Position numbers and translations under genes: made by a program. Shown here one piece after another: positions 583 to 63,042 of a stretch of DNA of 64,000 bases (positions are counted from its first letter, which is position 1; each line of letters starts with the position of its first letter). The notes under the pieces are model-generated. The model saw only the letters and a list, made by a program, of their open reading frames with translations. It was not told the origin of the DNA and ran no database searches. Source of the DNA: Octopus bimaculoides (taxonomy: Eukaryota). The stretch lies in contig NC_069007.1 in the NCBI RefSeq assembly GCF_001194135.2, positions 13,775,186 through 13,839,185 on the forward strand, in the 5' to 3' direction.

Positions 583-905
583 GCGCAGGAGTGGCTGTGT
601 GGTAAGAAGCTTGCTTACCAACCACTATAGCCTCAGGCCGAGCAAAGCCTTGTGAGTGAATTTGGTAGATGGAAACTGAAAGAAGCCCTTCATATGTCTG
701 TGTATCTGTGTTTGTCCCCTCACCATCACTTGACAACCAATGTTAGTGTATTTACCTCCCCATAACTTAGTTGTTCGGCAAAACAGACTGATAGAACAAG
801 TACTAGGCTTACAAAGAGTAAGTCCTGGAGTCAATTTGTTCAACTAAAGGTGGTGCTCCAGCGTGGCCACAGTCAAATGACCGAAACAAATAAATGAATA
901 AAAGA
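583..905 (+). mobile_element. Major SINE family A copy (internally deleted)
   Basis: Head gcgcaggagtggctgtgtggtaag, core gtggatttggtagayggaaactgaaagaagc, tail ggtgctccagcatggcc.cagtcaaatgac. Confidence 0.85.
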
Positions 906-15854: not shown

Positions 15855-16190
15855 ATGCGTAGGAGTGGTTGTGTGGTAAGTAGCTTGCTTACCAACCACA
15901 TGGTTCTGGGTTCAGTCCTCGGGCAGGTGTCTTCTGCTATAGCCTCAGGCCGATCAAAGCCTTGTGAGTGGATTTGGTAAACAGAGACTGAAAAAATCCC
16001 GTAGTGTGTATGTGTGTGACCATCGCTTGACAACCGATGGTGTGTCTATATCCCTGTAACTTAGTGGTTCAGTTAAAGAGACCGAGAGAATAAGTATTAG
16101 GCTTACAAAGAATAAGTTCTGGGATTGATTTGTTTGACATGGGGCAGTGCTCCAGCATGGTTGCAGTCAAATGACTAAAAATAGTCAAAG
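15855..16190 (+). mobile_element. SINE family A copy
   Basis: Head, core, microsatellite and tail present. Confidence 0.85.
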
Positions 16191-17909: not shown

Positions 17910-18280
17910 CTGGCATGGCTGTGTGGTATGAAGCTTGCTTCCCAACCACATGGTTCCAGGTTCAATCTTACTCATTGGAACCTTGGACAAGTATTTTCTA
18001 CTAGTCTTGGGCCGATCAAAATCTTGTGAGTGGATTTGGTAGAAAGAAACTGAGAGAAGCCAAGGTGTCATGTGTGTATTTGTATCCGTCCCCTCCATTA
18101 CCACCTGACAACCAGTGTTGGTCTGTTTATGTCCCCGTAACTCAGTGGTTCAACAAAAGAATAAGTCCTAGGCTTACAAAGTACAAGTCTCGAGGTCAAT
18201 TTCTTTGACTTAAAAAAAAAAAAAACCCTTTAAGGTGGTGCTCCAGCATGGCTGCAATCAATTGAAACATCTAAAGAATA
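17910..18280 (+). mobile_element. SINE family A copy
   Basis: tRNA-like head (ggttccaggttcaatc), core and tail. Confidence 0.85.
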
Positions 18281-18903: not shown

Positions 18904-19214
18904 GATGGGCTTCTTTCAGTTTCCATCTACCAAATCCACTCACAAGGCTTTGGTCGGCCCAAGGCTATAGCAGAAGACACTAGCCCAAGGTGTTACACAG
19001 GAGGACTGAACCCAGAACCATGTGGTTCGTAAGCAAGCTACTTACAACACAGCCACTCCTGTGTCATATATATTGCTTATTTATTCACATTATCTTGTAG
19101 CTTCAAGGTTTCAATGGTGCATTTGTATATTTTTAGAACGACATTGTAGGGTAGGTGTAAGAGATTGGATATGGTCAGGTTGAACATATAACAGGTAAAA
19201 TATTTGGGCTGGAT
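18635..19214 (-). mobile_element. Family-1 MITE interrupted by a full-length SINE
   Basis: TIR at 18635; MITE sequence resumes after ~19065. Confidence 0.75.
18654..19062 (-). mobile_element. Full-length SINE family A copy
   Basis: Complete reverse-complement copy with internal (TA)n. Confidence 0.9.
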
Positions 19215-22775: not shown

Positions 22776-24230
22776 AAACATACATGCACGCACTCAGACA
22801 CACATACATGCATGCATACACACAAACATACATGCACGCACACAAACATACATGCACGCACGTATGCACACACACACTTTATGTAGATATGTATATGCAC
22901 ACACACACACACACATATATATATTATATCTATAGTACATAATTTAGAACCTCCATTGCTAATTATGTTTAGAAGACTATTTGAACAGAATTCTCTCACA
23001 GTGTTGCAAATCCAAACCACTGCAATAATGACACAAAATCCAATCAAACTAACGAGCTTTACTTTTCAAATGGGCAAACAACATTTGTTTAGGCTTTCTT
23101 TTTCTCTTTTTTTCTTTTCTTTAGTCATCTGCACCCATCAAGGAATGTATTTTCTTGATCATTACAGATAGATTTCTCCCTCCTCCCTGAACACAATGTA
23201 AAGAAACCCCAGCATGGACAAACATGCCAGAAACAGCAGCCAAACGTTTTTTTTTCTGTTCTTTTGATGATGAGATACAGGCATGATAGCATGGTTAAGC
23301 AGTTCACTTCTCAACTATGTGATTCTGGTTTCAGTCCCATGCGTGACAATTTGGGCAGGGGACTTCAATTAGTGCCAACCACAGCCTTGTGGGTGGATTT
23401 GGTAGATGCAAACTGAATGAAGCTCATCGTGTGTGCGTGTGCGTGTGTGTGTGCGCACGCACCTCTAAAAATTACTCACCTACAGGCAGTGGACACGTTT
23501 CTCTTGTCAACAGGCTGTGTACTGACTGTGCTTTTGAAAATGTGTAGAAAAAGATATCTGTTACTGAAATACAGATATGGGTTAGCAGGAAAGGGAAGGG
23601 CATCCTGCTATGATAACATGCCCCAATAATATAGTGTAACCAATGTAAACAAGGAAAACAAAAACCTGTAAAAACAAACTGGATAGATTTGAAAGAAAAG
23701 GACACTAATGTGCTCCTGGTCAGGAAAACCGGATGGTTGGTCACAGCTGGAATGTCTGATTAGAACCCGAAGCAAAATAAAAAAAAATTTTTAAATCAAC
23801 ATTNNNNNNNNNNNNNNNNNNNNNNNNNNNNNNNNNNNNNNNNNNNNNNNNNNNNNNNNNNNNNNNNNNNNNNNNNNNNNNNNNNNNNNNNNNNNNNNNN
23901 NNNNNNNNNNNNNNNNNNNNNNNNNNNNNNNNNNNNNNNNNNNNNNNNNNNNNNNNNNNNNNNNNNNNNNNNNNNNNNNNNNNNNNNNNNNNNNNNNNNN
24001 NNNNNNNNNNNNNNNNNNNNNNNNNNNNNNNNNNNNNNNNNNNNNNNNNNNNNNNNNNNNNNNNNNNNNNNNNNNNNNNNNNNNNNNNNNNNNNNNNNNN
24101 NNNNNNNNNNNNNNNNNNNNNNNNNNNNNNNNNNNNNNNNNNNNNNNNNNNNNNNNNNNNNNNNNNNNNNNNNNNNNNNNNNNNNNNNNNNNNNNNNNNN
24201 NNNNNNNNNNNNNNNNNNNNNNNNNNNNNN

Positions 24231-26984: not shown

Positions 26985-27360
26985 CATGGCAGGAATGGCT
27001 TTGTGGTAAGAAGCTTGCTTCCCAACCACACAGTTCCAGGTTCAGTCCCACTGTGCAGCACTTTGGGAAAGTGTCATACTATAGCCTTGGGCCAATCAAA
27101 CCCTTGTGAGTGGATTTCATAGATAGAAACTGAAAGAAGCCTGTCGTGTGTGTATGAGTGTCCCCCACCACTGCTTAACAGGTGTTGGTGTGTTTATGTC
27201 TCTGTAACTTAGCAGTTCAGCAAAAGAGAAAAGAATGAGTAACAAGCTTAAAAAACAAAACAAAAAAAAAGTACTGGGAGTGATTCATTCATTCGACTAA
27301 AAATCTGAGGTGGTGCCCCAGCATGGCTGCAGTCTAATGACAAGTAAAAGATACAAGATA
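26985..27360 (+). mobile_element. SINE family A copy
   Basis: Head, core and tail present. Confidence 0.85.
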
Positions 27361-35480: not shown

Positions 35481-38400
35481 TTAAACAAGACCCTCACAGC
35501 ACCAAATCCCCCATGTGGGACTCATAGCTACACTTACAATTCAATGTTAAAAATTATCTGATCACTTCAAATTCACAAGACCACTACCCCTGAGAACATC
35601 CTTCCATTACCCTCAGTAATGCAACCCAGAGCTAAGCCCTCTTTACAGAGATAGATCCCAATTTTGAGGATTACAGTAGTGTATCCCATTCCTTGCTTTT
35701 GTCCCTGCCAATTAATCTCTTATACTCACTTCCAACAGATAAAAAGTTAACCATCAAAAACCTTATTCACTTTGAAACTCCTTCCTTCTGACCACAAAAA
35801 AAACTTCCAGGAGACCAGATCTATTAGGGCCCCACTTTCCTCTGTAACCAGGGTGCCCTTGCCCCCCAGAAATTTAAAATAGTGTTTTTGGTTTCACTTT
35901 CAATGTTTTCTTCTTTTCAACAAGGTCTGGTAAACAAAGCTGTCCACACATATACTCCATTTGTCCCTCAGGTTTTGGCTGGACAGACTGACCACAGTAA
36001 TGCAACCAGTGCTGATGGAACTGACACTCCATTCTGATTTGGCCTTGGGTTCAAGTTTTGTCCAATAATACCCCTCCTTCATTCAAGTATCTCCTACATG
36101 CAACAGGCATGCCAAATTGTCACTGACCACATGAATACATACTGCCCCAGGCCAGAAACATCCTCCAGTGTGTCATAGTGATGCCATCTCCTACAAATGG
36201 CAATGATTACTGCACCATATCACAAAAATATTGCACCTTGCCCTTCCTTTAAATCCAAAGCACACACCAAGAACCCACACAGCTGGTCCAAATGCTAAAT
36301 CTCACTAACTATCACTGAAGAATTCATATCCTAAACGCAGTAAAGACTCCATCTCAAAGACCAGCCTTCAAGTCCAGAAAACACTTCCTTTGTAACAGGT
36401 ACATATCACAAGATCTTGTCGCAATGTGATGGCTCAAGTGCTTCACCTCCAAGATTCAAACACATCTGCTGTAAACCATATAGCTGTTCTCTTTGTGTGT
36501 GTGTGTGCGTGTGTGTAGAACAAGATAGCTTTCAGTAGTACCCCTACAACCTGATGGTACTACCTGTACCATCAGGTTATAAGTGTACTAAATTCAAGTG
36601 TTAAAAATAAGTGATCAGAGAAAAAAAAAAGGGAGGGACAGGTAAAGGACAATACCATGTACTCGAATTAAGTATTCAAGAACATTCCTTTACAACAGAA
36701 TNNNNNNNNNNCTGTAAACCATATAGCTGTTCTCTTTGTGTGTGTGTGTGCGTGTGTGTAGAACAAGATAGCTTTCAGTAGTACCCCTACAACCTGATGG
36801 TACTACCTGTACCATCAGGTTATAAGTGTACTAAATTCAAGTGTTAAAAATAAGTGATCAGAGAAAAAAAAAAGGGAGGGACAGGTAAAGGACAATACCA
36901 TGTACTCGAATTAAGTATTCAAGAACATTCCTTTACAACAGAATGGTAAGCCGAACAAGAAATTAATGCAGCTGCCCATACCTGCTTTGGCAGGTAAATA
37001 CACCATTTCTAACAAAATAAGTGTTCTCGTTAACAATTGGGTGAAGTAAGAACAAGATGGAAACCTGGAAAAGGAGGGGGGGAGATTCTCTCAGAAATGA
37101 AAACATCTGCAATAAATTTAAACTAGGTTCAACAACTGGTGGAGGCCCACTTCAGCCCACTCACCAGTAGTTAGATAAATCACTGAATCATTGCAATTAA
37201 TTTCAAAGAGTTAATTAGAACTTGCAGTGGAAATTATTAAAAGTAGATTACTTGAGGACAAAGAAATATACAAGTGTGTATAGCGTGAGTGATTGTATAC
37301 AGTGTGCATGTAATGTGTGTGTGTATGAGTGTTTATATGTATGTGTGTGTCTTATGTACATGGAGGACTACTTGAGAAGTAGATGACAGTTTTTATTAAG
37401 GTTTCTGAGAACACTTCACAGAGCAANNNNNNNNNNNNNNNNNNNNNNNNNNNNNNNNNNNNNNNNNNNNNNNNNNNNNNNNNNNNNNNNNNNNNNNNNN
37501 NNNNNNNNNNNNNNNNNNNNNNNNNNNNNNNNNNNNNNNNNNNNNNNNNNNNNNNNNNNNNNNNNNNNNNNNNNNNNNNNNNNNNNNNNNNNNNNNNNNN
37601 NNNNNNNNNNNNNNNNNNNNNNNNNNNNNNNNNNNNNNNNNNNNNNNNNNNNNNNNNNNNNNNNNNNNNNNNNNNNNNNNNNNNNNNNNNNNNNNNNNNN
37701 NNNNNNNNNNNNNNNNNNNNNNNNNNNNNNNNNNNNNNNNNNNNNNNNNNNNNNNNNNNNNNCCCTAGTACCCTGTTGTATAGGCCCCCTCCTGCCAGTG
37801 AGATTTGAACCTAGCACAAAAGAACCAGTACAAAATACTATGAAACATTTTACCCAACGCTCTACCATTTGTTACTCCGCCACACCTCTGTAGAGATTAA
37901 CAACAGAGAAAGAGGATTCAATAACTTCAAATTTTAGAACAACAATTTTAAGGGAGATGGTTGGTGGATAACACTGACATGCCCCTCCCTCAGTATTTTA
38001 TCAAACCCAAAAGAATAAAAGCAAAGTTGAATTCAGCAGAATTTGAACTCAGGTGGGGAAAAATTCCACTGCATTTTGTCCAACGTCAAACAATTCTGCC
38101 AGTTATCAGTTAGTCACCTTTCTTAATAAAAGAAAATGGTCTTTGTTAGTTAGTCATAGAGTTATTTATGGACAAAGGAAGATCGTTGTATTCTTCAAAG
38201 AATTGGTCTCAATTTGGAAAGTGGAAAATATTGCTATAAGACTAAGCATGTCAGCATGCTGTCAAAGCTATTTCAACTACTGCTGCTTTACAAAAATAAA
38301 AGATGAAAGAATACTGGTCATAAAAATAAGAGAAACAACAAAAAATAAAACAGCAACTTAAAAACCATAAACTGAAGCAAACAAACTTAAAACAGATTTG

Positions 38401-39567
38401 CCAGTAAAACAATGGTAAAACAAAAAAATAACCGTTACTAGAAAATCAGGGTAAAACAGAGGCCAGTGAATAAATGTTATAGAATTTGACAATCCAAAGA
38501 TGGAGGTAGGAGTATCCAAAAAAAAAAAAAAATCTGTAGAAAATATCAAAAAAAAATAAACGAAACGGACGAACAGAATGTAGAAATAATTGTGAGACAT
38601 AATCAAACAGAAATGATTCTATATTTATAAAAGTATGTTTAAAGATAGCTTCACTAAATAATTTCAAGGTTGTAAACCTATAATTGATGGCGATGGTGGT
38701 AGGGAGAGGAGTGCATGTTGACAAACCGAAAAATAACGATCTCAGAGATGGATTTCTTCTGCTCGCACAATTGGGACAATGCAATTCTTGCAAATATAGA
38801 CAAGTCATAGAGGACACCTAAACATTTTTAAAAATCTGATTAACATGACTTCAAGCCCGACTTCAGAGGCTTTCTAATTGGAGTCGTACGCTACAGCGCC
38901 ACCTTCATAATTGTGTCATCCCTCATGGTGACCCCTTTAACTGCATCGCCCCGGTTGTTGACTCCCTGAGATTCTCTACCCAGGTTTCTTTTCTCGAGAG
39001 AAACTCAAGTCTCACCAGCTTCTGTGAGAAGAAGGAACAGCCCTTTCCTTTCAAATACAACCAGATTCAATGATGCAAGCATCAGGTCGCCGACACCGCA
39101 ATCATCTGTCACTCCTGACACCACACACTTCTCTCCACCTGTCATCAACTTATTAAACTTTAAACCAGCCACAGGCAAACTGCGGTCAGTTAGACTTTCT
39201 GAATGGCACACCGAGCGAAAAATAACCATCTTTTTTCTTGTTTTATAAATGGATTTTTTTTAAAGTAGTGCGGTCCGCCTATGGTGATGAGAAATGTCTC
39301 ATGTCCGAGTCACGTAAAAGCTTGCCCATGCCTGTTTTAAACAAACTTCAGCCGCAAGACTAAAAACGTTTAGAATTTAATAATCATACTTTTATATAGA
39401 AAAAAATATATATATATAGTGATATAAATATACTTTTATATATATAGAAAACACGAGGAGGAAAAATACAGAACGAAAAAATAAAACACTGACATGAACA
39501 AACAACTAAAAATGGTGAAGATGTGAATGAATGGAAGAAAACCTAGCAGAGGATAAAAGTTACTCAC

Positions 39568-39588
39568 CTCCCCATGCCGGAATCGGAA
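39568..39588 (-). other. Candidate 21-nt phase 0-0 microexon (FRFRHGE), or the 3' end of an alternative first exon
   Basis: Minus strand: ..ctttcccccgttaaaaattgccaatttttctctcag|TTCCGATTCCGGCATGGGGAG|GTGAGTAAC. About 79 nt AG-free upstream, pyrimidine tracts, TGC motif, consensus donor. Confidence 0.5.
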
Positions 39589-40206
39589 CTGAGAGAAAAA
39601 TTGGCAATTTTTAACGGGGGAAAGAGAAAAAAAGACAGTGAAGACATTGGAACAGTTCATAAAAAAAAACTGACCCCTTAAAAATAGGAACGGTTAAAAC
39701 TTGGCGGAAAATTGACTTTTCTAATAAAATTTTATTCCTTAAAGAGTAAAGAAAGATAAAATGAATGATTGAATGAATGATGTTTGAAGAGAGACGAAGA
39801 AAAATAAACAGCTGAGGTCAGAAAATGGAAAACGAAATAAAACCATCTGTTTTTACACACTGCTGCGATAAAAAAGTTCAAGCATTGATTTAAAAAATAA
39901 AAGAAGCATATTTCTATTTACATATAAATATATAATTTATTTAACAAAATGATACTTTTTTTCTTTTTTTTGCTTTACTAGTTCTATATATATGTGTGTG
40001 TGTGTGTAATGTTAAAAAGTAGAAATATAAAAAATAACGAAAAGAAAAATAGACAAAAATTGAAATGAAAGCCTAAATACCACAAATCCGGTTCTGGCTT
40101 TCAGAATAAAACAATGTATGATTCATACAGTGAAGTTTTACGTTAATAAAATATTTCTGCTCAGTAACTCGAGAGACAGAAAACACTTTATTTATATAAA
40201 TATATA

Positions 40207-40233
<27 letters not shown>

Positions 40234-40239
<6 letters not shown>

Positions 40240-40345
40240 ATATCTATATATCCATATCTATATATTATATATCCATATCTATATATTATATATCCATATC
40301 TATATATTATATATCCATATCTATATATTATATATCCATATCTAT
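40234..40345 (+). repeat. 21-bp tandem repeat (atatccatatctatatattat), ~5 copies
   Basis: Direct reading. Confidence 0.85.
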
Positions 40346-41509
40346 TATACAAAACACATGCCAAACATACATTTTTCATTACACACGCACTAATATATTA
40401 CATGAACTAAAAATGACTTAGAAAATAATTAAGCACATCAAAAACTAAATCAATAAACCACTAATATATAACATTACGTATTTTCCTGACACAACGTGTG
40501 TGCGTGCGTGCGTTTGACATCCCCCACACACTTCTAATTAAACCAAGACGAATATGTAAAGGTTAAGGTTGAAACTAATATATTTAATCCTAGATTTATT
40601 ATGTATGTCAGTATTATGTAAAACTAATAAAGCTAAAAATTTAATTTACAAAGTAAAAACATCTCGCGTCTTAAATACTTGGGCAATTTTCATTTAGAAA
40701 TATTTCTGAGAAAGAAAGAAAGAGCAGAGTTTGAGGGTAGCCGTCCTTTGAAGTTCCGAGCCTCAAGGAAGAGTAGAGAAAGAGGAGAAAATGAAATATA
40801 AAAAAAAATTGCGGAGAAAGAGGATATTTCTTAAAAATTATGATTTCCGTTCTATGAAAAACACACAAAATACTTTAAAATACTTTCCAATGAGATATTA
40901 GACTTCGAAGGGCAGTTATTCCAATAAAAGAAACCTCTTGCTATCTCCGATATTATTTAGACCTTGTGACGATGGGTGACTTAGGGTTTATGTTACGGTG
41001 TTGGGCTTGCCATTGCAAGGTCGTGCGTTCGACTCCACCCACGACCGAGTGCTGTGTTGTATCCTTGAGCAAGACCATTTCTTTAGCACCCCACCGGCTG
41101 ACAACAGGAGTTGAGACTTAAAACTTGCGTGGCATGGCGTCCCGTCTAGGGTGGAGGGCGTCTTCACAGATACCAATAGCAATGACCCGATGCTTCTATT
41201 TCAAAGCAGAAAGAGCCAAACTTGACGATAGCTCCATAGTGAGAAAATAAAATAAAAAGGAGTCTACCTGGTCAACAGACCTGCACGACATAGTAACCAA
41301 ATAGCCCTCAAATCAGTCTTCCAATGTAAAAGACATTGTACTATCATACTTATAAACTTAGACTGATCTATCATAAGCACCAGAACTTAAGGCCAGGGCT
41401 TAACGAGTTCTATAGCCTTACATGCTATGGAAAAAAAATGGCTTTATTTAGATCTCTGCTCAGTCATGACCAACAAGGGGCTAAACTACAGCAAACAGCC
41501 AAAATATTG

Positions 41510-41905: not shown

Positions 41906-42998
41906 AAATTCCTAATAATATTTAATTCATAAAAATATGATTATTTTAAAAAACATTGAACAGCTCTGAGGGTCCATTTCAGTAAAATAAGAACCAACAG
42001 GTTAACAAAATAGTTGAGAAACTGCTCAAACACTTCAAACGAAATCTCACTCATCCACGCCCATTTCTTGACAGCTGAACCAACCAGGAAGTATATCTAG
42101 ATCAATCGACCTGCCAGAAATAGTAACCAAATCTACCTCAAATCATGTCACACTTCCAAATTTTGTCACTATAATCCCAAGACAAGACAGTTATGAATGG
42201 GACATCTTTGGTCAAACGTCTGTTTAATTAGGATAAAGTACAAATGAACAGCTTAATGCTAGCTGGCATTTTCACTTTCAAAACATCGAGACTCCTTTTA
42301 CATAGCAGTTTGAAAAATAGATATTGATGAAAAAGACTAATTACTGGTGTGACATGATTGACTCAGGAAAACAGTGTTCCTGCATGACAGCTGACCAAGG
42401 ACTGAAACCAGTAAAAGACTGACCTAATAGTGCTCTCCTGCATGGCAAAGTCACCAGATGTGAACGATATTTGGTTTGATAGCACCCTATATCATCAGTA
42501 CCAAGAAATACAGACATAGCTGACAGTACAGTCTTCTACCAAAAAAAATCCCAGTACAAATTTGTAACCAAAAGTTAAAAGCCAGTTAAAAAATAATAGA
42601 ATGCTCTTTTAAATCATTTATAATACACACTCAAACCACAACCAAGGACCAATCAAAATATATATATACACACATACACACAGTATCATCTGTATAAAAA
42701 TTTGTATACCATTGTAATAGACTGACAGTTTAATTTAAGAGATTCTATAAACAGTCCATAACTCAAGTCTCGGATGAAGACCAAAATGGATTTAGCAAGA
42801 GCAATTAATACAGCACCACGAAGAATTTATGGTAACCAACAAACTAAAGAAATGCTCATATTGAAGAAAGAACATAACAGGACTGGCACAATCATACATA
42901 CACACACACACACACATAATACATACATACACACACACATACACACACACACACACATAATACATACATATGATCACTTTTAAGAATGTTTGACTTAC

Positions 42999-43010
42999 CG
43001 GTTTTGGCAT
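42999..43010 (-). CDS. RDX: First coding segment (MPKP) of a probable ERM (ezrin/radixin/moesin) gene
   Basis: Minus strand reads CCGACC ATG CCA AAA CCG | GTAAGT: good Kozak context, in-frame TAA 30 nt upstream, no upstream ATG in the exon, consensus donor in phase 0. Ezrin and radixin start MPKP with an intron after codon 4. Only 4 codons are visible, so the identity is an inference, and the symbol stands for the ERM family rather than a specific paralog. Confidence 0.68.
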
Positions 43011-43111
43011 GGTCGGTAGTGATGGTAAGGAATAATATTAATATCCAATGTTTATAGATTTATATCCTACTAGTCTATCTAGAAATACAGATTCCAAGAG
43101 GAAATCAAGTT
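42999..43111 (-). other. 113-nt internal exon (101 nt 5' UTR + 12 nt CDS) of the probable ERM gene
   Basis: Long polypyrimidine acceptor (..ttttttcctcttttttttctttgcag|AACTTG, AG at 43113-43112) and CCG|GTAAGT donor at 42998. The acceptor implies an upstream non-coding exon. Confidence 0.8.
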
Positions 43112-45228: not shown

Positions 45229-46124
45229 CAGGGTATTTCAAAAAATTTAATATCATTTCGCCATGTAATAACTTTGGCCAGTTCTTGTACAAATGACTTC
45301 ATATTTTAACAGCGTGTGTAGAAACAGGTCAAAATTTTGTGTTTAATGCTTGATATGTTTATCTTTTCAGGTATAGAAATGGTATTCACTGGAAGAGAAA
45401 TGGTGTTTTGTGTGTTGGAGTATGCTTGAACACAGTCAAAGAAGATTGTGCATTAGAGAGTTCTCTAAAAAGTCACCAATGGCAATGCAGATTTGGACAC
45501 GACACAAAAATTTCAAAGAGGAAGGCTGTCTGTGCAGGGCAAAAGGATCTGGGCGACCACTAACATCGGAAGAGACGATCGAGCGGGTTCGCCGAAAACT
45601 CTCGCGAAGCCCCAAGAAGTCCATAAGAAGAACAAACCTGGAAACCCAGATTCCTTCAATGACAGTTTGGCATGTCCTGAGGAAGTGCTTGCTAATGAAC
45701 CCCTACAAGCTGCAGCTTGTTCAGGCCATAACAGATGACAAGCGAAAGCACCAACAATTCTGTGTTGATTTGCAAGAGAAACTTGAAGAAGCCGAGTTCA
45801 AGGAATGTCTCGTTTCCTGCAAACCTAGAGGAACTCGAACAGAGAATCACTACCACACTGAAGACTGTTACCCAAGACATACTGCAGCATGTTTAGGAGT
45901 AGCTGGACTACCGACTTGATGTGTGCCGTGTCTCAGGTGGTGCGCATATTGAACATTTGTGAAATCATTCATGGAATCCACATACCTTTGAATTTCTCAT
46001 TCAAATTTGGAGGAATAAGTTTTATGTTGCTCAACATTAAGCCTGTTTAGTTTCATTTGCTTTGACTTTGTAGTTTCTGTGACATTTACATCTCAAATGA
46101 TGTCAAATTTTTTGAAACGCCCTG
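45229..46124 (+). mobile_element. Tc1/mariner-superfamily DNA transposon, internally deleted
   Basis: 29-bp TIRs CAGGGTATTTCAAAAAATTTAATATCATT / CAGGGCGTTTCAAAAAATTTGACATCATT (4 mismatches); TA on both sides. Confidence 0.93.
45379..45962 (+). pseudogene. Degenerate Tc1/mariner transposase (HTH N-terminus fused to C-terminus; catalytic domain deleted)
   Basis: MVFTGREMVFCVLEYA*.., ..GCLCRAKGSGRPLTSEETIERVR..SPKKSIRR..TVWHVLRKCLLMNPYKLQLVQAI.., then a jump near 45815 to ANLEELEQRI..LDYRLDVCRVSGGAHIEHL*. Contains stops and frameshifts. Confidence 0.9.
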
Positions 46125-50139: not shown

Positions 50140-51650
50140 CACGTTCTTTTACTTGTTTCAGTCATTTGACTGTGGCTGAGCTGGAGCACCGCCTTTAGTC
50201 AAGCAAATGGACCCCAGGACGTATTCTTTGTAAGCCTAGTACTTTATCAGCCTCTTTTGCTGAACTGCTACGTTACAGGGACGTAAACACACCAGCATTG
50301 GTTATGAAGAGATGTTGGAGGAACAAACACAGACACAAATATACACACACACACACATATATATATAACAGGCTTCTTTCAGTTTCCATCTACCAAATCC
50401 ACTCACAAGGCTTTGGTCGGCCCGAGGCTATAGTAGAAGACACTTGCCCAAGGTGCTACAGAGTGGGAATGAACCTGGAACCATGTGGTTGGGAAGCAAG
50501 CTACTCACCACACAGCCACTCCAGGTATTTTACACTACAAATCTCGAGGGATATTTGGCTGCTAGTTTTACCAGGTCAAGCTACTATTTAGGGACTCCAT
50601 TGTTGGTTGACCCATATACGTGTATGAAACTCATACGTGATTGGTGTGAAGAACACTTTATCAGGTACAAATGACCGGTCGTGGGAGAAAGAATGCAAAC
50701 AATAGGATTCAAATTGTTAACATGAAATGAATTCCAACCAAAGAAATCACAAAAAAAAAGAAATTCCTTCAGACACGTTTTTATGTCTATGTTTATAAAT
50801 ATGTACAATCGTATCTGAAGGAAAAACCACGTCAAGGGCAAAGAATGTAGTAATAACAAACCTATGACGTGTCGGTGTCATGTTGCAGGTTTTTAGGTGA
50901 CGCACAAACCTTGTGCCTCTTTGCTTTAGTCGTTGCACTGTGGCCATTCTGGGGTGTCACTTTGAAGCATTTTTTAGTCAAATTATACCCAGTACTCATT
51001 TTTAAGACTGATGCTTAGTATGTCAGTCACCTTTGGTGAACTGCTAAGTTACGGTGATGTAAACAAACCAACAACTGGTTGTCAAATGGTGGAGGAGAAT
51101 ATAAACACATGCACACATGAGTTTCTTTCAGTTTCTGTCTACCAAAGCCACCCACAAGGCATTGGTCGGCCTGAGGCTTTAGTTGAAAACACTTGCCCAA
51201 GATGCCATACAGTGAGACTGAACCCAGAACCATGTGATTGGGAAGCAAACTTATAAACATAGACCCATGCCTATGAAAAAATTCTTCCTACATAAAACAT
51301 TATAGAAAGTTTATCTAGGCATGGCTGTGTAGTAAGAAGCTTGGTTCCAGGTTCAGTCCCACTGCATGGCACCTTGGGCAAGTGTCTCGTATCATAGCTT
51401 CAGGTCCATCAAAGCCTTGTCAGTGGATTTGGTAGACAGAAACTGAAAGACACCTGTCATATATATGTGTATGCACGTGTGTCCCCCAGTACCACTTGAA
51501 GTGGTTACATCCCCATAACTTAGCAGTTCAGCAAAAGAGATAAAATAAGCCCCAGGCTTAGCAAAATACATGTATTGGGGGTTTATTAATTCAACTAGAA
51601 TTTCTTCAAAGTGGTGCGCCAGCATGATCACAGTCTAATGACTGAAACAA
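50140..51650. mobile_element. Three SINE family A copies: - (50140-50522), - (~50930-51270), + (~51317-51650)
   Basis: Family motifs. Confidence 0.8.
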
Positions 51651-52174: not shown

Positions 52175-54320
52175 GGTACTTCGTAACTGGCACTCGTGCC
52201 AGTGGCATGTGAAAAAGCAACCACTGCACTTTTGGAGTGGTTCGTGTTAGGAAGGGCATCCAGCTGTAGAAACCATGCTAAATCAGATTAGAACCTGGTG
52301 CAGCTTCCTGGCTTACCAGTTTTCAGTCAAACCATCCAACCCATGCCAGCATAGAAAACTGATATTAAATGATGGACCCTAAGGGTCATATTGACCCCCT
52401 GTTGAGAACCACTGGTCAAGTGCCTTTCAAAACCCTATTCTAACACTCATACAGTCCATGTATTTCAATTAGATTTTGTAAGACTTCTGATGTTTGGAAC
52501 ACCACTGAAGATAAAATTCTTTAAAATCCTGACAGAAGTTTCTAATTAGCAACAGACACTAAGGCTATCTCAAGCAGGTTGGCATAAAAAAAGTGGTTAA
52601 AAAATGCCTAAAAATAAAATAAAAATAAGTATGAAAATCTACTTGTAGCCCTGAACCAAGTCATGACTTCCTGTCTGATATGACTGATAAGAGGCAAATT
52701 AAATGGGATGTAGCGATTAGCTTNNNNNNNNNNAGGGGCAACTACAGTAGCAGTTGTTTAATCCAAGTTCAGTTCTAACCAAAATTGAGGACCAGGAAGA
52801 GTTCAAAGATCAACCATCTATTGCTTTTCTCTTCAGGCATAGACTACCCAGAGTCACATCAGCCAATGTCAGTCCTTTTAAGAAAGGCATTAAGATGTTA
52901 GATAAGGGACATTTGGCTGCTGTTTCTAGTATCTCAGGAGACCACCAAGTGACAGTTTCAGCTGGACTAGATCAGCCCTGACTGAGCAAATGCATCTCGA
53001 CTTTTTACTATTCACAGAGCACCAAAAGGACCTCATTACCCAATGTTCTTTTCTAAGACAGTGAGGTGTGATGAGGGAGATTTGGCTGCTATTTCCAGCA
53101 AGCATCAGGTAAAAGAATGGCACAATCAACAGACCATCATACAAAATGCCTTGCAATATTTCTTCAAATCCCTCTGAGGTTAACTTTACCTTTCATCCTT
53201 CCAGTGCCAAAATGAAATACCAGGTGGTTGAAAAGAAAAATCTAGGAATGTGCACCAAATATGAAGTATGGACACGAGGGAAATGGATCCCGTGTACACG
53301 TGATATGCAGGACAAGCAAAGAGTTAAGCACTTGTCAGAGGAGAGTAGTGTGACATTGCTAAATCAAGTTATACAAAATATTTTTCTGCTCTAGGCACAA
53401 GAGCCCGAAATTTTGGAGGAGGGGCGGGACAGTCGATTAGATCGTCACCAGTACACAACTGGTACTCAATTTATCAAGTCCAAAAGGATGAAAGGCAAAG
53501 TTGACCTCGGCGGAATTTGAACTCAGATCATAAAGACAGACGAAATGCCGCTAAGCCTTTCGCCCTAAATGCTAACGTTTCTGCCAGCTACAAAATCTAT
53601 CTTTATATTACAATGAACGTAAACAAACAAACGAAGTTTGCTTTAGAAGCGTTGAGATGTCTTTTTTCTGCAAAATAGGGGTAGCTTATCCTGTTCAGGC
53701 TATATTATAAGCATTACCCTGCGTTTGAGAATTTAAAATCACTTTAACTATCTTTGTGGCATTGATTCTTTGTGGCATTGATTCTTTGCCTGTCTAAAAC
53801 GTCCGTGCTTGTTTTCAGCCTTTTAGCTAACCTTTGCTTCATACATTCTGAATAGTATAAAGCTTTCTTTCCATAGTCCCAAGTTACTGTGGTGATTGAA
53901 AAAAAAAAAATTAGTGTATCCTAAACGATATATGGATGCCAAAGAAATGTCCTCTGTATAATTTGTGACACAGGACTGAGTTAAAATACAAATTGGTCCT
54001 AGAAAGAAAAAAAACCCCTTACTTTTGGTTAAGTTGAACAGAGAAACTGTTGTGTTGATGTAGCGTTTATATTGGTGAGAAAGAGATAAAGGTTCGCATG
54101 GACACTGTTTAACTCTAGGTCAGACTTGATTAGACACAGCTAGGATTACACTTATGACACACATTCCCATATATATCTAAGATTAATATATCTAAGATTA
54201 ATCCAGTATCTTTTTCAAAGTTTTTTTTTGTTTTTGTTTTTAGAGACATTGGCTGCTATTTCAAGACAGTCCACTGACCAGAAGGCCCTGTAGTTTGGTA
54301 CATTAAATCCTGAGCCTGTT

Positions 54321-54321
<1 letters not shown>

Positions 54322-54384
<63 letters not shown>
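54322..54384 (+). repeat. (TA)n microsatellite; other simple repeats include (CA)n 4322-4368, (GA)n 6126-6190, (TA)n 44636-44700, (GT)n 52123-52172
   Basis: Direct reading. Confidence 0.95.
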
Positions 54385-54388
<4 letters not shown>

Positions 54389-54530
54389 TCGCCAAGCCAA
54401 CATGGCAGTCCCAAAATTAGGACGAAAGCTGCCGTGAATTAGCTCCAAGAAGCCATCGCCTCTAGCTAGCTATGTGACACACGAAACCTGTGTCCTTTAT
54501 TTGGGACTGCCATGTTGGCTTGGCGATAAC
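54385..54530. mobile_element. 146-bp MITE with perfect 31-bp TIRs, TA-flanked
   Basis: GTTATCGCCAAGCCAACATGGCAGTCCCAAA (54385-54415) and its exact reverse complement (54500-54530); TA both sides, with a (TA)n tract on the left. Confidence 0.85.
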
Positions 54531-54639
54531 TATTAATTTCCAGTACCGCTGCCGTAGTCTCCTTTAGAGAGACTTAGAAATATTAATAACTCTATATATA
54601 TATATATATATATATATTATAGCCCAAGACACCTAATAA

Positions 54640-54920
54640 TGGGCATAGAATCGTTTGCCTGTTTGTTCTTATATAACAGACAGGTGTGTGTGATTTGCGA
54701 GAGATTTGGCTGCTATTTCTAGACGGTTGACAGACACAAAGGCTCCCTGTAGCTTTGATAAGTCCATAACATGCTGCCATACAAATTGGCGAAGGCATTA
54801 TTCAAACCATAAAATTATTTTCCTAGTTTTTATACAACAGACAAGAGGGTGGGATTTGAGAGATTTGGCTATTATTTCGGTTAAGGCAGCCGACCCCAGC
54901 GGCTCCTAGAGATATTTCTT
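54640..54920. repeat. Unclassified abundant repeat with core gagatttggctgctatttctag; fragments also near 28190, 30540, 31470, 41200, 42060, 43540, 52900, 55220, 55930, 60880, 61490
   Basis: The same core motif recurs more than 10 times in both orientations. Confidence 0.6.
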
Positions 54921-56029
54921 TTGTTGAGTGGGAGGAAGATGCAGGGTGGGGTGGGGGTAGATTGCTGGTAAGGAGACATCGTAGGGCGGCCAGAGAGGAA
55001 AGGAACATAGAAGAGGAGGAAAAGGAAGCTGTAACGGGTGATGCAATAAGAGAATCAGTGACGAGGGGTACTGGGGTATGATAAGGGTGCAGCAAGCTGA
55101 GCGGGAAGAGATGAAGACAAAGAACTGCAGTATTTGAAGCTGGTGGGATTGTTTAGGCCCCCTACCCCTCACCACTAAAAATTTTTTTTAAAAAGTCGGC
55201 CCTGAACTAGCAAACGTATGATCAAAAATGGATTTCAGTTACTAACATCCCATCCCTATTTAAGGATAGTGGGAAGGACATGGAGATTTGGTTGCTATTT
55301 CTAGCAGGTGGAGTATTTACCTCCCGTTTAGTCTGCAATCCATATATACATATACATATATACGCACAACACACATATACACACTGAATATAGACGTGCG
55401 CGTGCAAGTGAAAACACGAGGTTTAAAATATTTGAAAGTGAAGTGCGAGTCTCAGAGTTATCCCAAGACACTATAGAGACGGAGGTGATGCGATGGCCAT
55501 GATGCCTATCACGAACAGAAACTATCACAGGTTCTCATATCGTATTAGCCCTGACTTTCTCCGAAACTTAGAAACGGAAAGCTTAGAATATGCAAACACA
55601 CACATATATATATCCCAGCAGAGGGAGAGGGCGAGATTGTGACATTTTTTTTCCTAACTTTCTTACGGTACAAATNNNNNNNNNNNNNNNNNNNNNNNNN
55701 NNNNNNNNNNNNNNNNNNNNNNNNNNNNNNNNNNNNNNNNNNNNNNNNNNNNNNNNNNNNNNNNNNNNNNNNNNNNNNNNNNNNNNNNNNNNNNNNNNNN
55801 NNNNNNNNNNNNNNNNNNNNNNNNNNNNNNNNNNNNNNNNNNNNNNNNNNNNNNNNNNNNNNNNNNNNNNNNNNNNNNNNNNNNNNNNNNNNNNNNNNNN
55901 NNNNNNNNTAAAAAAAAAAAAAAACCAAGGGCGATTTGGCTGCTATTTCTAGTAGATCGAGGGCCAACTAACAGGAGCAGTGATTCTATTTGAATATACT
56001 CGGCATATATATATATTTATTATATGCGT

Positions 56030-56350
56030 GGACATGACTAGTTAATAAAGCTCGCTTCGCAGCCACGTGGTTTCTGGTTCAGTTCTACTGCGCGGCAGTT
56101 TGGAGAATTGTCTTCAACTTCGCAAGTAGATATGGTGGGTGGAAACTGGATGTAGGTATGGCCCACCACCACTTGACAACTTATGATAGTTCAAGTCGCC
56201 ATAACTCAGCAGTTCGAAATACATGACTCTAAAAAAAAATTTTTTTAATTAAAAAAACAAAAATAAGGCACTAGGGTCGATTTATTCGACGAAAATCCGC
56301 CAAGATGGTGCTCCAGTATGGCCACAGTAAAATAACTGAGAAAGTAAAAG
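56030..56350 (+). mobile_element. Diverged SINE family A copy
   Basis: Head-like ..gccacgtggtttctggttcagtt.., tail ggtgctccagtatggccacag. Confidence 0.65.
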
Positions 56351-58112
56351 AAAGTTGTTGTTTAATTAGCGGACAATCCTCAGCTGCTATGTATCACTAT
56401 ATCGAGTGAGGATATAAATATCCTCACTCGATATTTATAGAGAAAGGATCCCTAATCACCTCAGCCGGGGTCGACATTTCTCTAATCCCTACTAGAAGGG
56501 GTTGGAGGGACGAAATTAAAAGTACCGGTGATAAACATAGGTCCATTCAATGAAAATAACCTCTCTCCAGCAAAGATTACTGGATAGATTTGTGTCAACG
56601 CGAGAAACCTAGCAGACCGGCTGCGTAACCGAAAACCAGGTTTTAGAGACGCTTCTTGGTTTTTATTTAATTTTTACTCTATCCACCATCACCAGAGTCA
56701 ACAAACCCAAAACTTAGCACAGCCAGCTGTACCGTAATGAGGGTCATCCACAACCGCGAACCCATTTACAACAGGCTTCAAGAGAACAGTGTACAATTTA
56801 GCTCGAAGATCAAGTCAAATAGAACGGGTAACCTACGATCGAAGTCCTTCAAGCGCATGACCAACCCAGTTCTAAATGGATAAGGCTGCAGGGTATGGTT
56901 TTGAAAGATTTACTACCTGCTATTTCTAACAGAAAGACCGACTACATCATAATGGTTGGCCTTTGTGCGCAACTATGACATTGGAGAGAGAGATGGGGGG
57001 AGGAGAGGGTGCGGAGGACCATCAACCTTTTGGCAATCGATATTTTCATTATAACAAAGCATATTTATAGATAAGAAAGATAGTGCAGTCTTAAGGCGCC
57101 GAACCCTATACATAAAAGTCCCGAAACCGGCGGCGCTGTATGTCCGTCCCATCCATGGCCAATACTGATTAATTAACAACTACACGACTTAACTGACCTT
57201 AAATCCACGAAGCAGTGAATAAATGCCGCAAGGTAGCAACAACGAAAACATTGCTCTAATAATAACGTTTTATTTGCCACGAGGGCATAGATGATGGAAA
57301 CATCACAAGGACAGTTTACAATAATGGTGGAGACGGGTTAAATATAAGATGAGGTGGGAAAGCCTGAAAGGAGAAAAGAATACATGGTACAACAATAATA
57401 ATCGAAGTACAAACAAGATCAGCAGTTTTTTTAGGGTAGGCGCAAAGTCGATTACATCGACCCAAGTACTTATCAATCCCGAAAGGATGAAAGACAGAGT
57501 CGACCTCAGTGGAATTTGAGCTCAGAACCTAATGACTGAAATAAGTAGTGTTCAGTTTTTGTAAAATTTACTCAAACTTTTATTAGGTTATATAAATGGA
57601 GAATTAATTACAGACGGGGATTATAAAATTCGAGAGTGATGGGCACAACTAGGTTGTGCTTGCTTGCTTGGTGGTAGCCTTGTTATTAAAATATGCAGAC
57701 ATTTCTACACACAAAGAGACTTTATATAGCTAGGTGGCCTTACATTAAAACAAGATTCCACCCAGAAAGAATGACGTAGTTGTGCTGAAGACGGGTGCGA
57801 CGACGACGAAGTGGAAGGTCAAAGGGCAAAGCTGCGCTGTTTCATAAGGTGGGTGGGTACAGAGTAGAACAGAACTGTCAGTTGAAAGTTTTACGTGTCT
57901 GAGCAAGTTTATACGGGACACAGTTTTGTGCTTTTGATAATGTTTTTAATTTTTATTCTCTTCGAGCCATATCTAGCCTTCAGCTACACACCCGCAATAA
58001 TTACATATTGCTGCGTATACCTAAAACGTGTACACAGAAAAATCACTGCTCTCATATATATATATATATATATATATAAAGCAACATCTATACACGCACG
58101 CGGCTATATACA

Positions 58113-58330
58113 CCTAATGCAACATCTATACACACATTGCTGTAGACGCCTAATGCAACACATACACACTGTTGTAGTCGCCTAGTGCAACATATATACA
58201 CACTGTTGTAGTCGCCTAGTGCAGCATATATACACACTGTTGTAGACACCTAGTGCAACATATAAACACTGTTGTAGACACCTAGTGCAACATATAAACA
58301 CTGTTGTAGACACCTAGTGCAACATATATA
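58113..58330 (+). repeat. Minisatellite, 32-36 bp unit (cctagtgcaacatata(ta)cacactgttgtagaca), 6.5 copies
   Basis: Units start at 58113, 58149, 58181, 58215, 58249, 58281, 58313. Confidence 0.92.
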
Positions 58331-58963
58331 TATATATATATTATATATTACATGCACAAATACATAGTTAAAACAGATTGTGTGTGCATATATATGTATA
58401 TACACACACAACAGCCATATATATGCCTAAAGCAACACAGAGACATATACACATATATATATATTAACGTCAAATACAAACAAATCATTCCAAATATAAA
58501 CTCCCATAACATTACAAATAGCAACAACATTTAATGTAAGCAACACTTAAAACCTAACAATAAAACAGCAATTAAAAGAGACAGAATATAATGTGCAAAA
58601 CACACACAAATATATATCTATGTAAAATCGGGAAGAGTCTATATATTAAGCCACTAGAACACAACTAAAACATACTCTTGTTGGATCAACAAGATTTAAT
58701 AGTTGTAACTCATCTTCCTAAAACCATTAAAAACAATGAGACAATTATGAAATACCATAACGTACGTTGTTAAGATTACATACGAATATTCCTCTCGTAC
58801 AAAGTATATAATATAATAGATACATTAAATATTAGATATATTTGGTGGTAGGAGGTTTGCTTCATGCCGGCCAATGCCATTGTAAGTAGATTTGGTAAAC
58901 TGTAACTGAGAAAAGCCGTCGTGAAAGAAACCGAAGCAGACGTAAATATTTGTTCCACTAAAC

Positions 58964-60017
58964 CAGGGATGGGAAAACTTTTTAGTGCGGCGGGCAAGAA
59001 TTTCCAAAGAAAAAGGTCCGCGGGCGGGTCACAAGTTCTAACTCATATATATATATATTACAAATTAAAAGAGTAAAGGATTATCAATTTATTAATTAAT
59101 AAATCAATTAACAATTAATAAATTTTACCAAGCCCATCGGTATGAAAGCACCATTATTGGTGGAGAACTTATTTAAAAGCTCATATATATTTATAAACAT
59201 AATTAAGGGATCAGCAAATATTTGCTTCACCATATACCGAAGTTCAGTTAAGAAGGACAGTTAGACTGGCTGACCGAAGTGGATTCGGTTATGCTTTCAG
59301 ATCTGTGTCGGTGTGGAATGTTACTCGTTCATGCTTGCACAGTTTGCTAGCATAGTCAAATTTACTGCTGGAATACAGTATTGATGAAGGAAATTGAGTA
59401 TCAATCATAATCCAGAAACGCGTCTACTGTTAACCTCCGGAATGGTTAGTTTTTCANNNNNNNNNNNNNNNNNNNNNNNNNNNNNNNNNNNNNNNNNNNN
59501 NNNNNNNNNNNNNNNNNNNNNNNNNNNNNNNNNNNNNNNNNNNNNNNNNNNNNNNNNNNNNNNNNNNNNNNNNNNNNNNNNNNNNNNNNNNNNNNNNNNN
59601 NNNNNNNNNNNNNNNNNNNNNNNNNNNNNNNNNNNNNNNNNNNNNNNNNNNNNNTGTGTGAATAAGTCGATATACATTAATAAAGATAAGTTTAACACAT
59701 TAAATTAACACATAACATTACTAACACCGCCACTGAATTTAGGACGTTTCTATATTTTTCAGCTAGAATATAGTTAGGTCTCAAGGCAGGGGGAGGGGGT
59801 ACTAACAATGTGCTTTATAGTGATAACATTACCGGACGATTTCTGTTCGAGTCTGACCCTTCTAGGTCGTAGTGGAAACGCGACTTATCTCGCAAACAGG
59901 CATACAAATATTGTATAAATTTTACAATTGAAAAATTTACTATATCTTGAACATACGAGTATATAAACCTGCGGGCGCAATGAAATGGGCCGGCGGGTGG
60001 GGTTTTCCCCACTCCTG
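58964..60017. mobile_element. Non-autonomous hAT-type element with 8-bp TSD
   Basis: Imperfect TIRs CAGGGATGGGAAAAC / CAGGAGTGGGGAAAAC; exact 8-bp duplication CACTAAAC at 58956-58963 and 60018-60025; GC-rich GCGGGC subterminal motifs. Contains an N gap. Confidence 0.85.

Positions 60018-62982: not shown

Positions 62983-63042
<60 letters not shown>

What the first reader, a model, noticed from the sequence alone, without database searches (positions are those of the whole stretch)
39568..39588. Candidate neural-type 21-nt microexon inserting FRFRHGE at the ERM N-terminus
Seen: ~79-nt AG-free zone, two pyrimidine tracts, a TGC about 15-18 nt before the acceptor, a stop-free 21-nt exon and a GAG|GTGAGT donor, in phase 0-0 like the intron after MPKP. 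Known: UGC motifs near the 3' splice site plus strong donors mark SRRM4/eMIC-dependent neural microexons in bilaterians. Inferred: inclusion gives MPKP-FRFRHGE-(xNVRVTT..), a basic/aromatic insert just before FERM lobe F1 that might alter membrane/PIP2 binding or autoinhibition. Alternative reading: an alternative first exon, in frame from ATG 39660 (MNCSN..FRFRHGE) or non-coding.
Basis: partly seen in the sequence, partly recalled or inferred. Interest (0 to 1): 0.72.

Follow-up and report, generated by a model that had tools for sequence, protein, structure and literature searches.

The report
Unconfirmed microexon candidate in ERM intron
A 21-base stretch with very good splice signals lies in the long first coding intron of what looks like a mollusc (probably octopus) ezrin/radixin/moesin gene, but nothing in the protein collections searched contains its product, so it is a reasonable but unproven alternative exon, not a discovery.

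Summary
The sequence is as described. On the minus strand, cag|TTCCGATTCCGGCATGGGGAG|gtgagt (39588..39568) has a 79-nt AG-free zone, two pyrimidine tracts, a TGC at -18 and an open frame (FRFRHGE).

The host gene is plausibly ERM. ATGCCAAAACCG|GTAAGT (43010..42993) matches the first coding exon of a clam ERM gene, which is followed by a phase-0 intron and VNVRVTT. However, no FERM exon lies in the window.

At the strictest thresholds, such a splice-site pair is expected about 0.001-0.1 times per strand. Looser versions occur at chance rate. The donor ranks 3rd of 3,942 GT sites.

Three searches of 5.8 billion protein clusters found no protein with FRFRHGE next to xNVRVTT. This covered thousands of ERM proteins and mollusc isoforms. 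No cephalopod genome or RNA-seq data could be reached, so usage, neural specificity and conservation are untested.

The site lies in a 2.75-kb CpG-undepleted island, which suggests a regulatory region.

My rough weights:
- Unused pseudo-exon: about 0.5.
- Real cassette microexon: about 0.25.
- Alternative first exon: about 0.15.

Interest is low to moderate.

The parts
39568..39588 (-). Candidate 21-nt exon TTCCGATTCCGGCATGGGGAG (FRFRHGE). It is 62% GC, has 2 CpG and contains the direct repeat TTCCGR x2. An out-of-frame ATG lies at 39575..39573.
   Evidence: GC is 13/21 against 33-34% in the 100-nt flanks. Only 3.4% of 21-mers in the window reach this GC, and 0.9% reach it with at least 2 CpG.
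39589..39671 (-). 3' splice-site region. Acceptor AG at 39590-39589; Py run at 39600..39591; UGC at 39606..39604; Py tract with UCUC at 39635..39616; branch-point-like TTCAC at 39642..39638; T9 run at 39669..39661; previous AG at 39671-39670 (AG-free zone 79 nt).
   Evidence: One of only 3 acceptors on this strand with at least 10/12 pyrimidines, an AG-free zone of at least 40 nt and a UGC at -26..-8. No CURAY branch point is present.
39562..39567 (-). 5' splice site GTGAGT (full 9-mer GAG|GTGAGT).
   Evidence: Ranks 3rd of 3,942 GT sites on the minus strand with an approximate consensus matrix. It is the strongest donor in the 38.5-41.25 kb island.
39658..39660 (-). In-frame ATG for the alternative-first-exon reading (MNCSNVFTVFFSLSPVKNCQFFSQFRFRHGE). 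Its context is weak: T at -3, A at +4.
   Evidence: 42 open codons before the donor.
42999..43111 (-). ERM-type first coding exon. Acceptor tttctttgcag| (AG 43113-43112), 5' UTR, ATG 43010, CCA AAA CCG, then donor GTAAGT at 42998..42993. Phase-0 intron.
   Evidence: Identical coding and donor sequence in the Mactra ERM locus L002. Donor ranks 5th of 3,942.
38500..41250 (.). CpG-undepleted island (o/e 0.6-1.6) inside an otherwise CpG-depleted intron (o/e 0.1-0.35). It contains the candidate.
   Evidence: Unique within the window.
39016..39021 (-). Second microexon-like site in the same island: ttccttcttctcacag|AAGCTG|gtgaga (6 nt, KL, phase-0 compatible).
   Evidence: It shows how readily such pairs arise.

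Best explanation
The stretch is most likely an intronic pseudo-exon. A very strong 5' splice site and a good, eMIC-looking 3' splice site happen to lie 21 nt apart. They sit 3.4 kb into the more-than-43-kb phase-0 intron that follows the MPKP exon of a mollusc (probably octopus) ERM gene. On this reading the pair is not spliced into the mature ERM mRNA at an appreciable level, and the protein starts MPKP-VNVRVTT as in other molluscs. The surrounding CpG-undepleted island would then be an intronic regulatory region, probably unmethylated in the germ line, whose CpG retention also explains the two CpGs in the 21-mer. Shown: the sequence features, the ERM-type first exon, and the absence of the product from all proteins searched. 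Inferred: that the site is not used.
For: No protein with the insert turned up among 896 short, 3,127 full-length and 639 short ERM-like hits. A protein carrying the insert should have scored well above the best non-insert scores of 175, 201 and 75 bits. RefSeq isoforms X1-X3 of several bivalves all start MPKPVNVRVTT. The clam's intron 1 has no related exon. Looser acceptor-donor pairs occur at the chance rate in this window (20 found against 14.9 expected, and 5 against 4.5). A second phase-compatible pair lies 550 nt away. A repeat family supplies 7 more YAG-21nt-GTGAGT mimics. No strong branch point (CURAY) is present. From general knowledge, pseudo-exons with good splice sites greatly outnumber real exons in long introns, and mammalian ezrin and moesin are reported as single isoforms (PMC6515277).
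Against: The strict combination of features is rare: 0.0025 to 0.11 expected per strand, and about 0.001 semi-empirically. It is found nowhere else in about 258 kb of strand sequence examined. The donor is stronger than the presumably real MPKP donor. The order BP-Py-UGC-AG with a 79-nt AG-free zone is the published eMIC code. The 21-mer is a GC-rich block bounded exactly by the two splice sites. The database negative is weak for a tissue-restricted microexon, and I could not verify that this species' ERM is in the collection.
Confidence: 0.5

Rival explanations
1. It is a real, frame-preserving cassette microexon. In cells expressing the eMIC form of Srrm234 (neurons), the factor would bind the UGC at -18 between the distal Py tract and the AG. 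It would help U2AF/U2 recognise the 3' splice site, while the strong donor recruits U1. The product would be MPKP-FRFRHGE-VNVRVTT, a 7-residue basic/aromatic extension of the flexible tail before strand beta-1 of lobe F1.
For: Every sequence criterion of the eMIC code that could be tested is met, apart from a strong branch point (literature). The length is 21 nt, open in phase 0-0. The exon has exon-like GC. The strict combination is rare by chance. Small inserts at exactly this position are annotated in other animals' ERM genes: a 7-aa insert in Callorhinchus and a 29-aa insert in Cyanocitta.
Against: No protein with the insert exists in any length range searched. It is not present in the bivalve intron, so at best it is lineage-restricted. 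The proximal 10-nt Py run makes the 3' splice site conventional rather than weak. There is no CURAY branch point. The prior that any given gene carries such an exon is about 1% (my estimate). The thresholds were chosen after the fact.
Confidence: 0.25
2. The donor at 39568 ends an alternative first exon transcribed from an internal promoter in the CpG-undepleted island. That exon would splice to the VNVRVTT exon. The product would begin at ATG 39660 (MNCSN...FRFRHGE-), or the exon would be non-coding. The acceptor-like signals would be coincidental.
For: A CpG-undepleted island at 38.5-41.25 kb sits inside a CpG-depleted gene body. The candidate's donor is the strongest in the island. There is an in-frame ATG with 42 open codons. 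Alternative N-termini spliced in phase onto xNVRVTT are annotated in many ERM genes, including a gastropod: Batillaria MSAMRGPK|VNVRVTT, with its first exon 0.9 kb upstream of exon 2.
Against: No protein MNCSN...FRFRHGE-VNVRVTT was found. The ATG context is weak, and an out-of-frame ATG (39575) lies inside the 21-mer. The would-be exon is T-rich and intron-like. The GC-rich core of the island (38850-39350) lies downstream of the donor, which places a likely TSS after it. The rare acceptor architecture would be left as a coincidence of about 0.002-0.005. Part of the island looks like a SINE, and part is tandem repeat.
Confidence: 0.15
3. The splice-site pair belongs to something other than the ERM coding mRNA. 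It could be an exon of a non-coding or rare transcript from the island. It could also be a decoy that influences removal of the very long intron.
For: The intron is over 43 kb, and an island of unknown function surrounds the site.
Against: It is not a recursive splice site, because the acceptor is followed by TTCCGA, not GT. Rfam and tRNA scans found no known RNA family. There is no positive evidence.
Confidence: 0.1

Closest known systems
SRRM4/SRRM3 (eMIC-domain)-dependent neural microexons of bilaterians
   Same: Length of 3-27 nt in a multiple of three. UGC close to the 3' splice site, downstream of a UCUC-containing Py tract. A long AG exclusion zone. A strong 5' splice site, as in mammalian targets. 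A host gene that links cytoskeleton to membrane.
   Different: Inclusion, neural restriction and eMIC dependence are untested. There is no strong CUAAY/CURAY branch point. A second, proximal Py run gives a conventional 3' splice site. No conservation could be shown, and no product is in any database searched.
Alternative N-terminal first exons of ERM genes (annotated isoforms in vertebrate radixin genes and the gastropod Batillaria; Drosophila Moesin isoforms, from my own knowledge)
   Same: A short, unrelated peptide is spliced in phase 0 onto the exon beginning xNVRVTT. Here there is an in-frame ATG and a CpG-undepleted island that could be a promoter.
   Different: Those isoforms replace MPKP rather than following it. 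Most are computational predictions. Here no transcription start site or product is documented.
Merlin (NF2) N-terminal extension ahead of the FERM domain
   Same: Extra residues immediately before lobe F1 of an ERM-family FERM domain, with a regulatory role there (Ser10/Ser13 phosphorylation; PMC6515277).
   Different: The merlin extension is constitutive, about 17 residues long, unrelated in sequence, and not produced by a microexon.
Intronic pseudo-exons (splice-site pairs in long introns that are not used)
   Same: Lies in a very long intron, with no evidence of use. Neighbours of similar type are present in the window.
   Different: The splice-site quality and architecture are well above the window's other pseudo-exons.

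Membership tests
eMIC/SRRM4-dependent neural microexon | Exon of 3-27 nt that preserves the reading frame | tested here: met
   21 nt, no stop codon, phase 0-0 with the MPKP intron.
eMIC/SRRM4-dependent neural microexon | UGC motif between the Py tract and the AG, close to the 3' splice site | tested here: met
   The single UGC is at -18..-16, downstream of the 20-nt Py tract at -47..-28. Criterion taken.
eMIC/SRRM4-dependent neural microexon | Long AG exclusion zone with a distal, strong branch point | tested here: inconclusive
   The AG-free zone is 79 nt. Only 4 acceptors on the strand reach 70 nt, and one of them belongs to the MPKP exon. The only branch-point-like site is TTCAC at -54, and there is no CURAY.
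eMIC/SRRM4-dependent neural microexon | Strong 5' splice site (mammalian targets) | tested here: met
   GAG|GTGAGT ranks 3rd of 3,942 GT sites (approximate matrix).
eMIC/SRRM4-dependent neural microexon | Inclusion in mRNA, enriched in neural tissue, dependent on the eMIC domain | not testable with these tools
   No RNA-seq, junction or perturbation data are available.
eMIC/SRRM4-dependent neural microexon | Encoded peptide present in predicted or assembled proteins | tested here: not met
   No FRFR, RFRH, FRHG or RHGE next to xNVRVTT in the best 120 hits of three searches. A protein carrying the insert should have ranked first.
eMIC/SRRM4-dependent neural microexon | Conservation of the exon and flanking intron in related species | tested here: inconclusive
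   Absent from intron 1 of the bivalve Mactra ERM gene. No cephalopod genome was reachable. A metagenome scan for a degenerate form of the exon found 0 matches.
ERM (ezrin/radixin/moesin) gene | First coding exon ends after MPKP (12 nt of CDS) with a phase-0 intron | tested here: met
   ATGCCAAAACCG|GTAAGT gives 1 match against 0 in 100 shuffles. It is identical in Mactra ERM locus L002, where it is followed by cag|VNVRVTT.
ERM (ezrin/radixin/moesin) gene | FERM-domain exons downstream on the same strand | tested here: inconclusive
   None found in the 43 kb available, using human or mollusc ERM queries. They may lie beyond the window start or in one of 17 assembly gaps.
Alternative first exon from an internal promoter | Promoter-like (unmethylated, CpG-retaining) region around the exon | tested here: met
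   CpG o/e of 0.6-1.6 at 38500-41250, against 0.1-0.35 in the rest of the intron.
Alternative first exon from an internal promoter | Transcription start upstream of the donor | not testable with these tools
   No CAGE or 5' RACE data are available.
Recursive splice site / RS-exon | Acceptor AG immediately followed by a GT that recreates a 5' splice site | tested here: not met
   The sequence is cag|TTCCGA.

The most novel reading that the evidence does not exclude
A lineage-restricted (cephalopod) eMIC-type neural microexon adds the basic/aromatic heptapeptide FRFRHGE between MPKP and strand beta-1 of lobe F1 of an ERM protein. This would give neurons an ERM variant with an altered N-terminal tail. 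It would also show that the UCUC-UGC-AG microexon code operates in Lophotrochozoa.
Probability: 0.2. Interest if true: 0.45.

Novelty: new member of a known kind. Interest (0 to 1): 0.25.

Why it matters
If the exon is used, it would be a documented N-terminal splice variant of a mollusc ERM protein. Mammalian ezrin and moesin are described as single isoforms (PMC6515277). It would also be a concrete, mutable test case (UGC to UAC, with or without eMIC) for whether the bilaterian neural microexon code works in cephalopods. That is a modest addition to a known class of exon. If it is not used, it shows that even a textbook-perfect microexon architecture in the right frame cannot be called from sequence alone. 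The CpG-retaining island around it may be the more useful lead, because it points to an internal regulatory region or promoter of the gene.

Tried and rejected
- **ERM exon 2 in the window.** Nothing was found.
- **Exact look-ups.** I looked up the two window ORFs that run through the candidate and through MPKP. Neither is on record.
- **Protein search.** A 96-aa chimeric query returned only proteins of 68-168 aa, so the tool seems to filter by length.
- **Protein search.** Padding the query with X to 541 aa got round the length filter and returned 3,127 full-length ERMs. None has the insert.
- **Protein search.** A two-row profile (alternative-first-exon product plus the genomic ORF) also found nothing. 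No orthologous genomic ORFs appeared, so no cross-species comparison was possible.
- **Finding this species' own ERM mRNA.** The one unplaced Logan transcript (P0240/L001) does not share the 5' UTR. Ranking by similarity cannot single out cephalopods, because all phyla are about 64% identical.
- **Other look-ups.** Two RefSeq isoform look-ups were not on record.
- **DNA, RNA and literature scans.** The metagenome DNA scan for a degenerate exon gave 0. Rfam and tRNA scans gave 0. A literature search for the peptide gave 0. The one paper with octopus exon data holds no supplements.
- **Repeat origin.** Rejected. The 500 bp around the exon and the whole island are unique in the window apart from microsatellites.
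- **Recursive splice site.** Rejected.
- **My first impression that ORF 45410-45919 is transposase-like.** Not supported by Pfam.
- **One simulation script timed out** and was rerun.

Full report
**What is there.**
On the minus strand the window reads ...ttcactgtctttttttctctttcccccgttaaaaattgccaatttttctctcag|TTCCGATTCCGGCATGGGGAG|gtgagtaac. The 21-nt stretch (39588..39568) translates to FRFRHGE without a stop. The features upstream of it are:
- Acceptor AG at 39590-39589.
- A 10-nt pyrimidine run at -12..-3.
- The only TGC of the last 110 nt at -18..-16.
- A 20-nt pyrimidine tract containing UCUC at -47..-28.
- A branch-point-like TTCAC at -54.
- The next AG at -83, which gives a 79-nt AG-free zone.

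The donor is GAG|GTGAGT. ATG 39660 is in frame, and 42 codons are open before the donor.

**Host gene.**
- 3.4 kb upstream on the same strand lies tttctttgcag|...ACCGACC ATG CCA AAA CCG|GTAAGT (exon 43111..42999).
- The pattern ATGCCNAARCCN-GTRAGT occurs once in the window and in none of 100 shuffles.
- In the annotated ERM gene of the bivalve Mactra antiquata (locus L002), the first coding exon is the identical ATGCCAAAACCG|GTAAGT. It is followed by a 7.8-kb phase-0 intron and then ttttttcag|GTCAATGTACGC = VNVRVTT.
- The ERM assignment is therefore well founded by gene structure.
- It rests on four codons, however. tblastn with human and five mollusc ERM proteins, plus motif searches, found no other ERM exon in the window.
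- Exon 2 must lie more than 43 kb downstream, beyond the window start, or in one of the 17 assembly gaps.
- I believe the organism is an octopus, because I recognise the abundant repeat. That is memory, not a test.

**Chance.**
- With loose criteria there are 32 acceptor/short-gap/GTRAGT pairs in the window. The candidate is the best of them.
- With strict criteria (YAG, at least 10/12 pyrimidines, 3-51 nt, AG|GTRAGT) it is the only one on either strand. None occurs in 130 kb of two other mollusc ERM loci, counting both strands.
- A first-order Markov null gives 0.11 per strand. Adding frame and openness gives 0.02. Adding an AG-free zone of at least 40 nt gives 0.0025.
- Real counts on the minus strand are 2 such donors and 3 acceptors with Py, AG-free zone and UGC. 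Together they give about 0.001.
- The donor ranks 3rd of 3,942 GT sites, above the MPKP donor, which ranks 5th.
- The 21-mer has 62% GC and two CpGs, against 33-34% GC in its flanks. Only 0.9% of 21-mers in the window combine these properties.
- Against this, the thresholds were fitted to the candidate.
- Relaxed versions occur at chance rate: 5 found against 4.5 expected, and 20 against 14.9.
- A second phase-compatible pair, cag|AAGCTG|gtgaga (39021..39016), lies nearby.
- A repeat family contributes seven YAG-21nt-GTGAGT mimics.

**Evidence of use.**
I ran three searches of the 5.8-billion-cluster protein collection, each built so that a protein with the insert would rank first.

| Search | Query | Hits | Best non-insert score |
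|---|---|---|---|
| 1 | 96-aa chimera | 896 hits, the best 120 of them 68-168 aa | 175 bits |
| 2 | Chimera padded with X to 541 aa | 3,127 full-length ERMs | 201 bits; rank 120 at 198 bits |
| 3 | Profile of the alternative-first-exon product and the genomic ORF | 639 hits | 75 bits |

- No sequence contains FRFR, RFRH, FRHG or RHGE next to xNVRVTT.
- RefSeq isoforms of Mya, Dreissena, Mercenaria and Ruditapes all begin MPKPVNVRVTT.
- The clam's intron 1 holds no FRFR-like exon.

These negatives have caveats:
- Lengths of 169-379 aa were not covered.
- Microexons are often missed by annotation, and they break de Bruijn contigs.
- I could not bring this species' own ERM into view. Ranking by similarity cannot isolate cephalopods, and the one unplaced transcript has a different 5' UTR.
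- No cephalopod genome or RNA-seq data are reachable with these tools. A metagenome scan and a literature search found nothing.

**Context.**
- The window is strongly CpG-depleted (o/e 0.1-0.35), with two exceptions.
- The first exception is 38500-41250 (o/e 0.6-1.6), which contains the candidate. The second is roughly 53-64 kb, upstream of the MPKP exon and probably the main promoter region.
- The inner island is unique in the window. It contains a tRNA-like, SINE-looking piece and tandem repeats.
- Its GC-rich core (38850-39350) lies downstream of the candidate donor.
- This suggests a germ-line-unmethylated regulatory region or internal promoter.
A start site in the core would, however, lie after the donor.
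- Annotated ERM genes in many animals carry alternative N-termini spliced onto xNVRVTT. Examples are Batillaria MSAMRGPK|, several vertebrate radixins, a 7-aa insert in Callorhinchus and a 29-aa insert in Cyanocitta. The tail before lobe F1 therefore tolerates variation.

**Weighing the hypotheses.**
- The architecture matches the published code. The mammalian work describes Py tract, then UGC, then AG, with a long BP-AG distance and a strong 5' splice site (10.1101/2024.09.17.613571). The Drosophila work describes long AG exclusion zones, UGC near the 3' splice site and UCUC-rich Py tracts (PMC8797185).
- I made rough genome-scale estimates. These are my own arithmetic from the counts above and from assumed numbers of real short exons. 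On them, chance pairs of this quality and real alternative microexons of this quality are of the same order of abundance.
- The missing product and the low per-gene prior tip the balance.
- My weights are: unused pseudo-exon about 0.5, cassette microexon about 0.25, alternative first exon about 0.15, other about 0.1. They are soft.

**Mechanism if real (inference).**
The eMIC form of Srrm234 would bind the UGC at -18 and promote recognition of the 3' splice site, helped by the strong donor. The protein would gain seven residues (two Arg, one His, two Phe, one Glu) in the tail preceding strand beta-1 of F1. Any effect on PIP2 binding or on FERM-C-tail autoinhibition is untested speculation. The nearest precedent for a functional pre-FERM extension is merlin's N-terminal extension (PMC6515277).

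**Novelty and verdict.**
Whatever it proves to be, it belongs to a known kind: a microexon, an alternative 5' exon or a pseudo-exon. The host gene is plausible. The functional interpretation cannot be decided with the tools at hand. Interest is low to moderate.

Noticed in passing
window 38500-41250: A CpG-undepleted island (o/e 0.6-1.6; 57 CpG in 2.5 kb against about 20 in neighbouring sequence) sits inside a CpG-depleted intron. It has two blocks separated by AT-rich tandem repeats (about 40200-40340). It may be an internal promoter or enhancer of the ERM gene.
   Followed up: partly
window ~53000-64000: A broad region of CpG o/e 0.5-1.07 lies upstream of the MPKP exon. It is likely the main unmethylated promoter region. 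The ATG exon has its own acceptor (AG 43113-43112), so a non-coding exon should lie upstream.
   Followed up: no
window 628-657(+), 13516-13545(-), 15940-15969(+), 18002-18031(+), 18938-18967(-), 27082-27111(+), 50401-50430(-): A dispersed repeat family carries TAGCCTYGGGCCGAYCAAAGCCTTGTGAGT. Each copy mimics an acceptor, a 21-nt gap and a strong donor. I recall it as an abundant octopus SINE, but this was not verified.
   Followed up: partly
window 39016-39021 (-): A second microexon-like site: ttccttcttctcacag|AAGCTG|gtgaga. It is 6 nt (KL), compatible with phase 0, and has the second-best donor in the island.
   Followed up: partly
window 41000-41250 (-): A GC- and CpG-rich segment with a tRNA-like motif (...gtggagtcgaacgcacgaccttgcaatgg...). 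It looks like a tRNA-derived SINE. ARAGORN and Rfam report nothing.
   Followed up: partly
proteins P0122, P0141, P0124, P0125 (search 2): Annotated ERM isoforms in other animals carry extra or different residues exactly between MPKP and xNVRVTT. Callorhinchus has a 7-aa insert (LCWAHYT), Cyanocitta a 29-aa insert, Hipposideros a 10-aa insert, and Batillaria an alternative start (MSAMRGPK).
   Followed up: partly
window, 17 runs of N (e.g. 4740-5448, 23804-24230, 37427-37762): The sequence is a draft assembly with 3,119 N in 17 gaps and many (GT)n/(TA)n microsatellites. An 84-nt ERM exon 2 could be hidden in a gap.
   Followed up: no
window 45410-45919 (+): A 169-aa ORF that looked transposase-like to me has no Pfam match at E<=0.01. 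Four other ORFs of 123-135 aa and one of 74 aa also have none.
   Followed up: yes
tool behaviour, vs 19: the search for homologous proteins appears to list only proteins about 0.7-1.75 times the query length. Padding the query with X shifts that range.
   Followed up: yes
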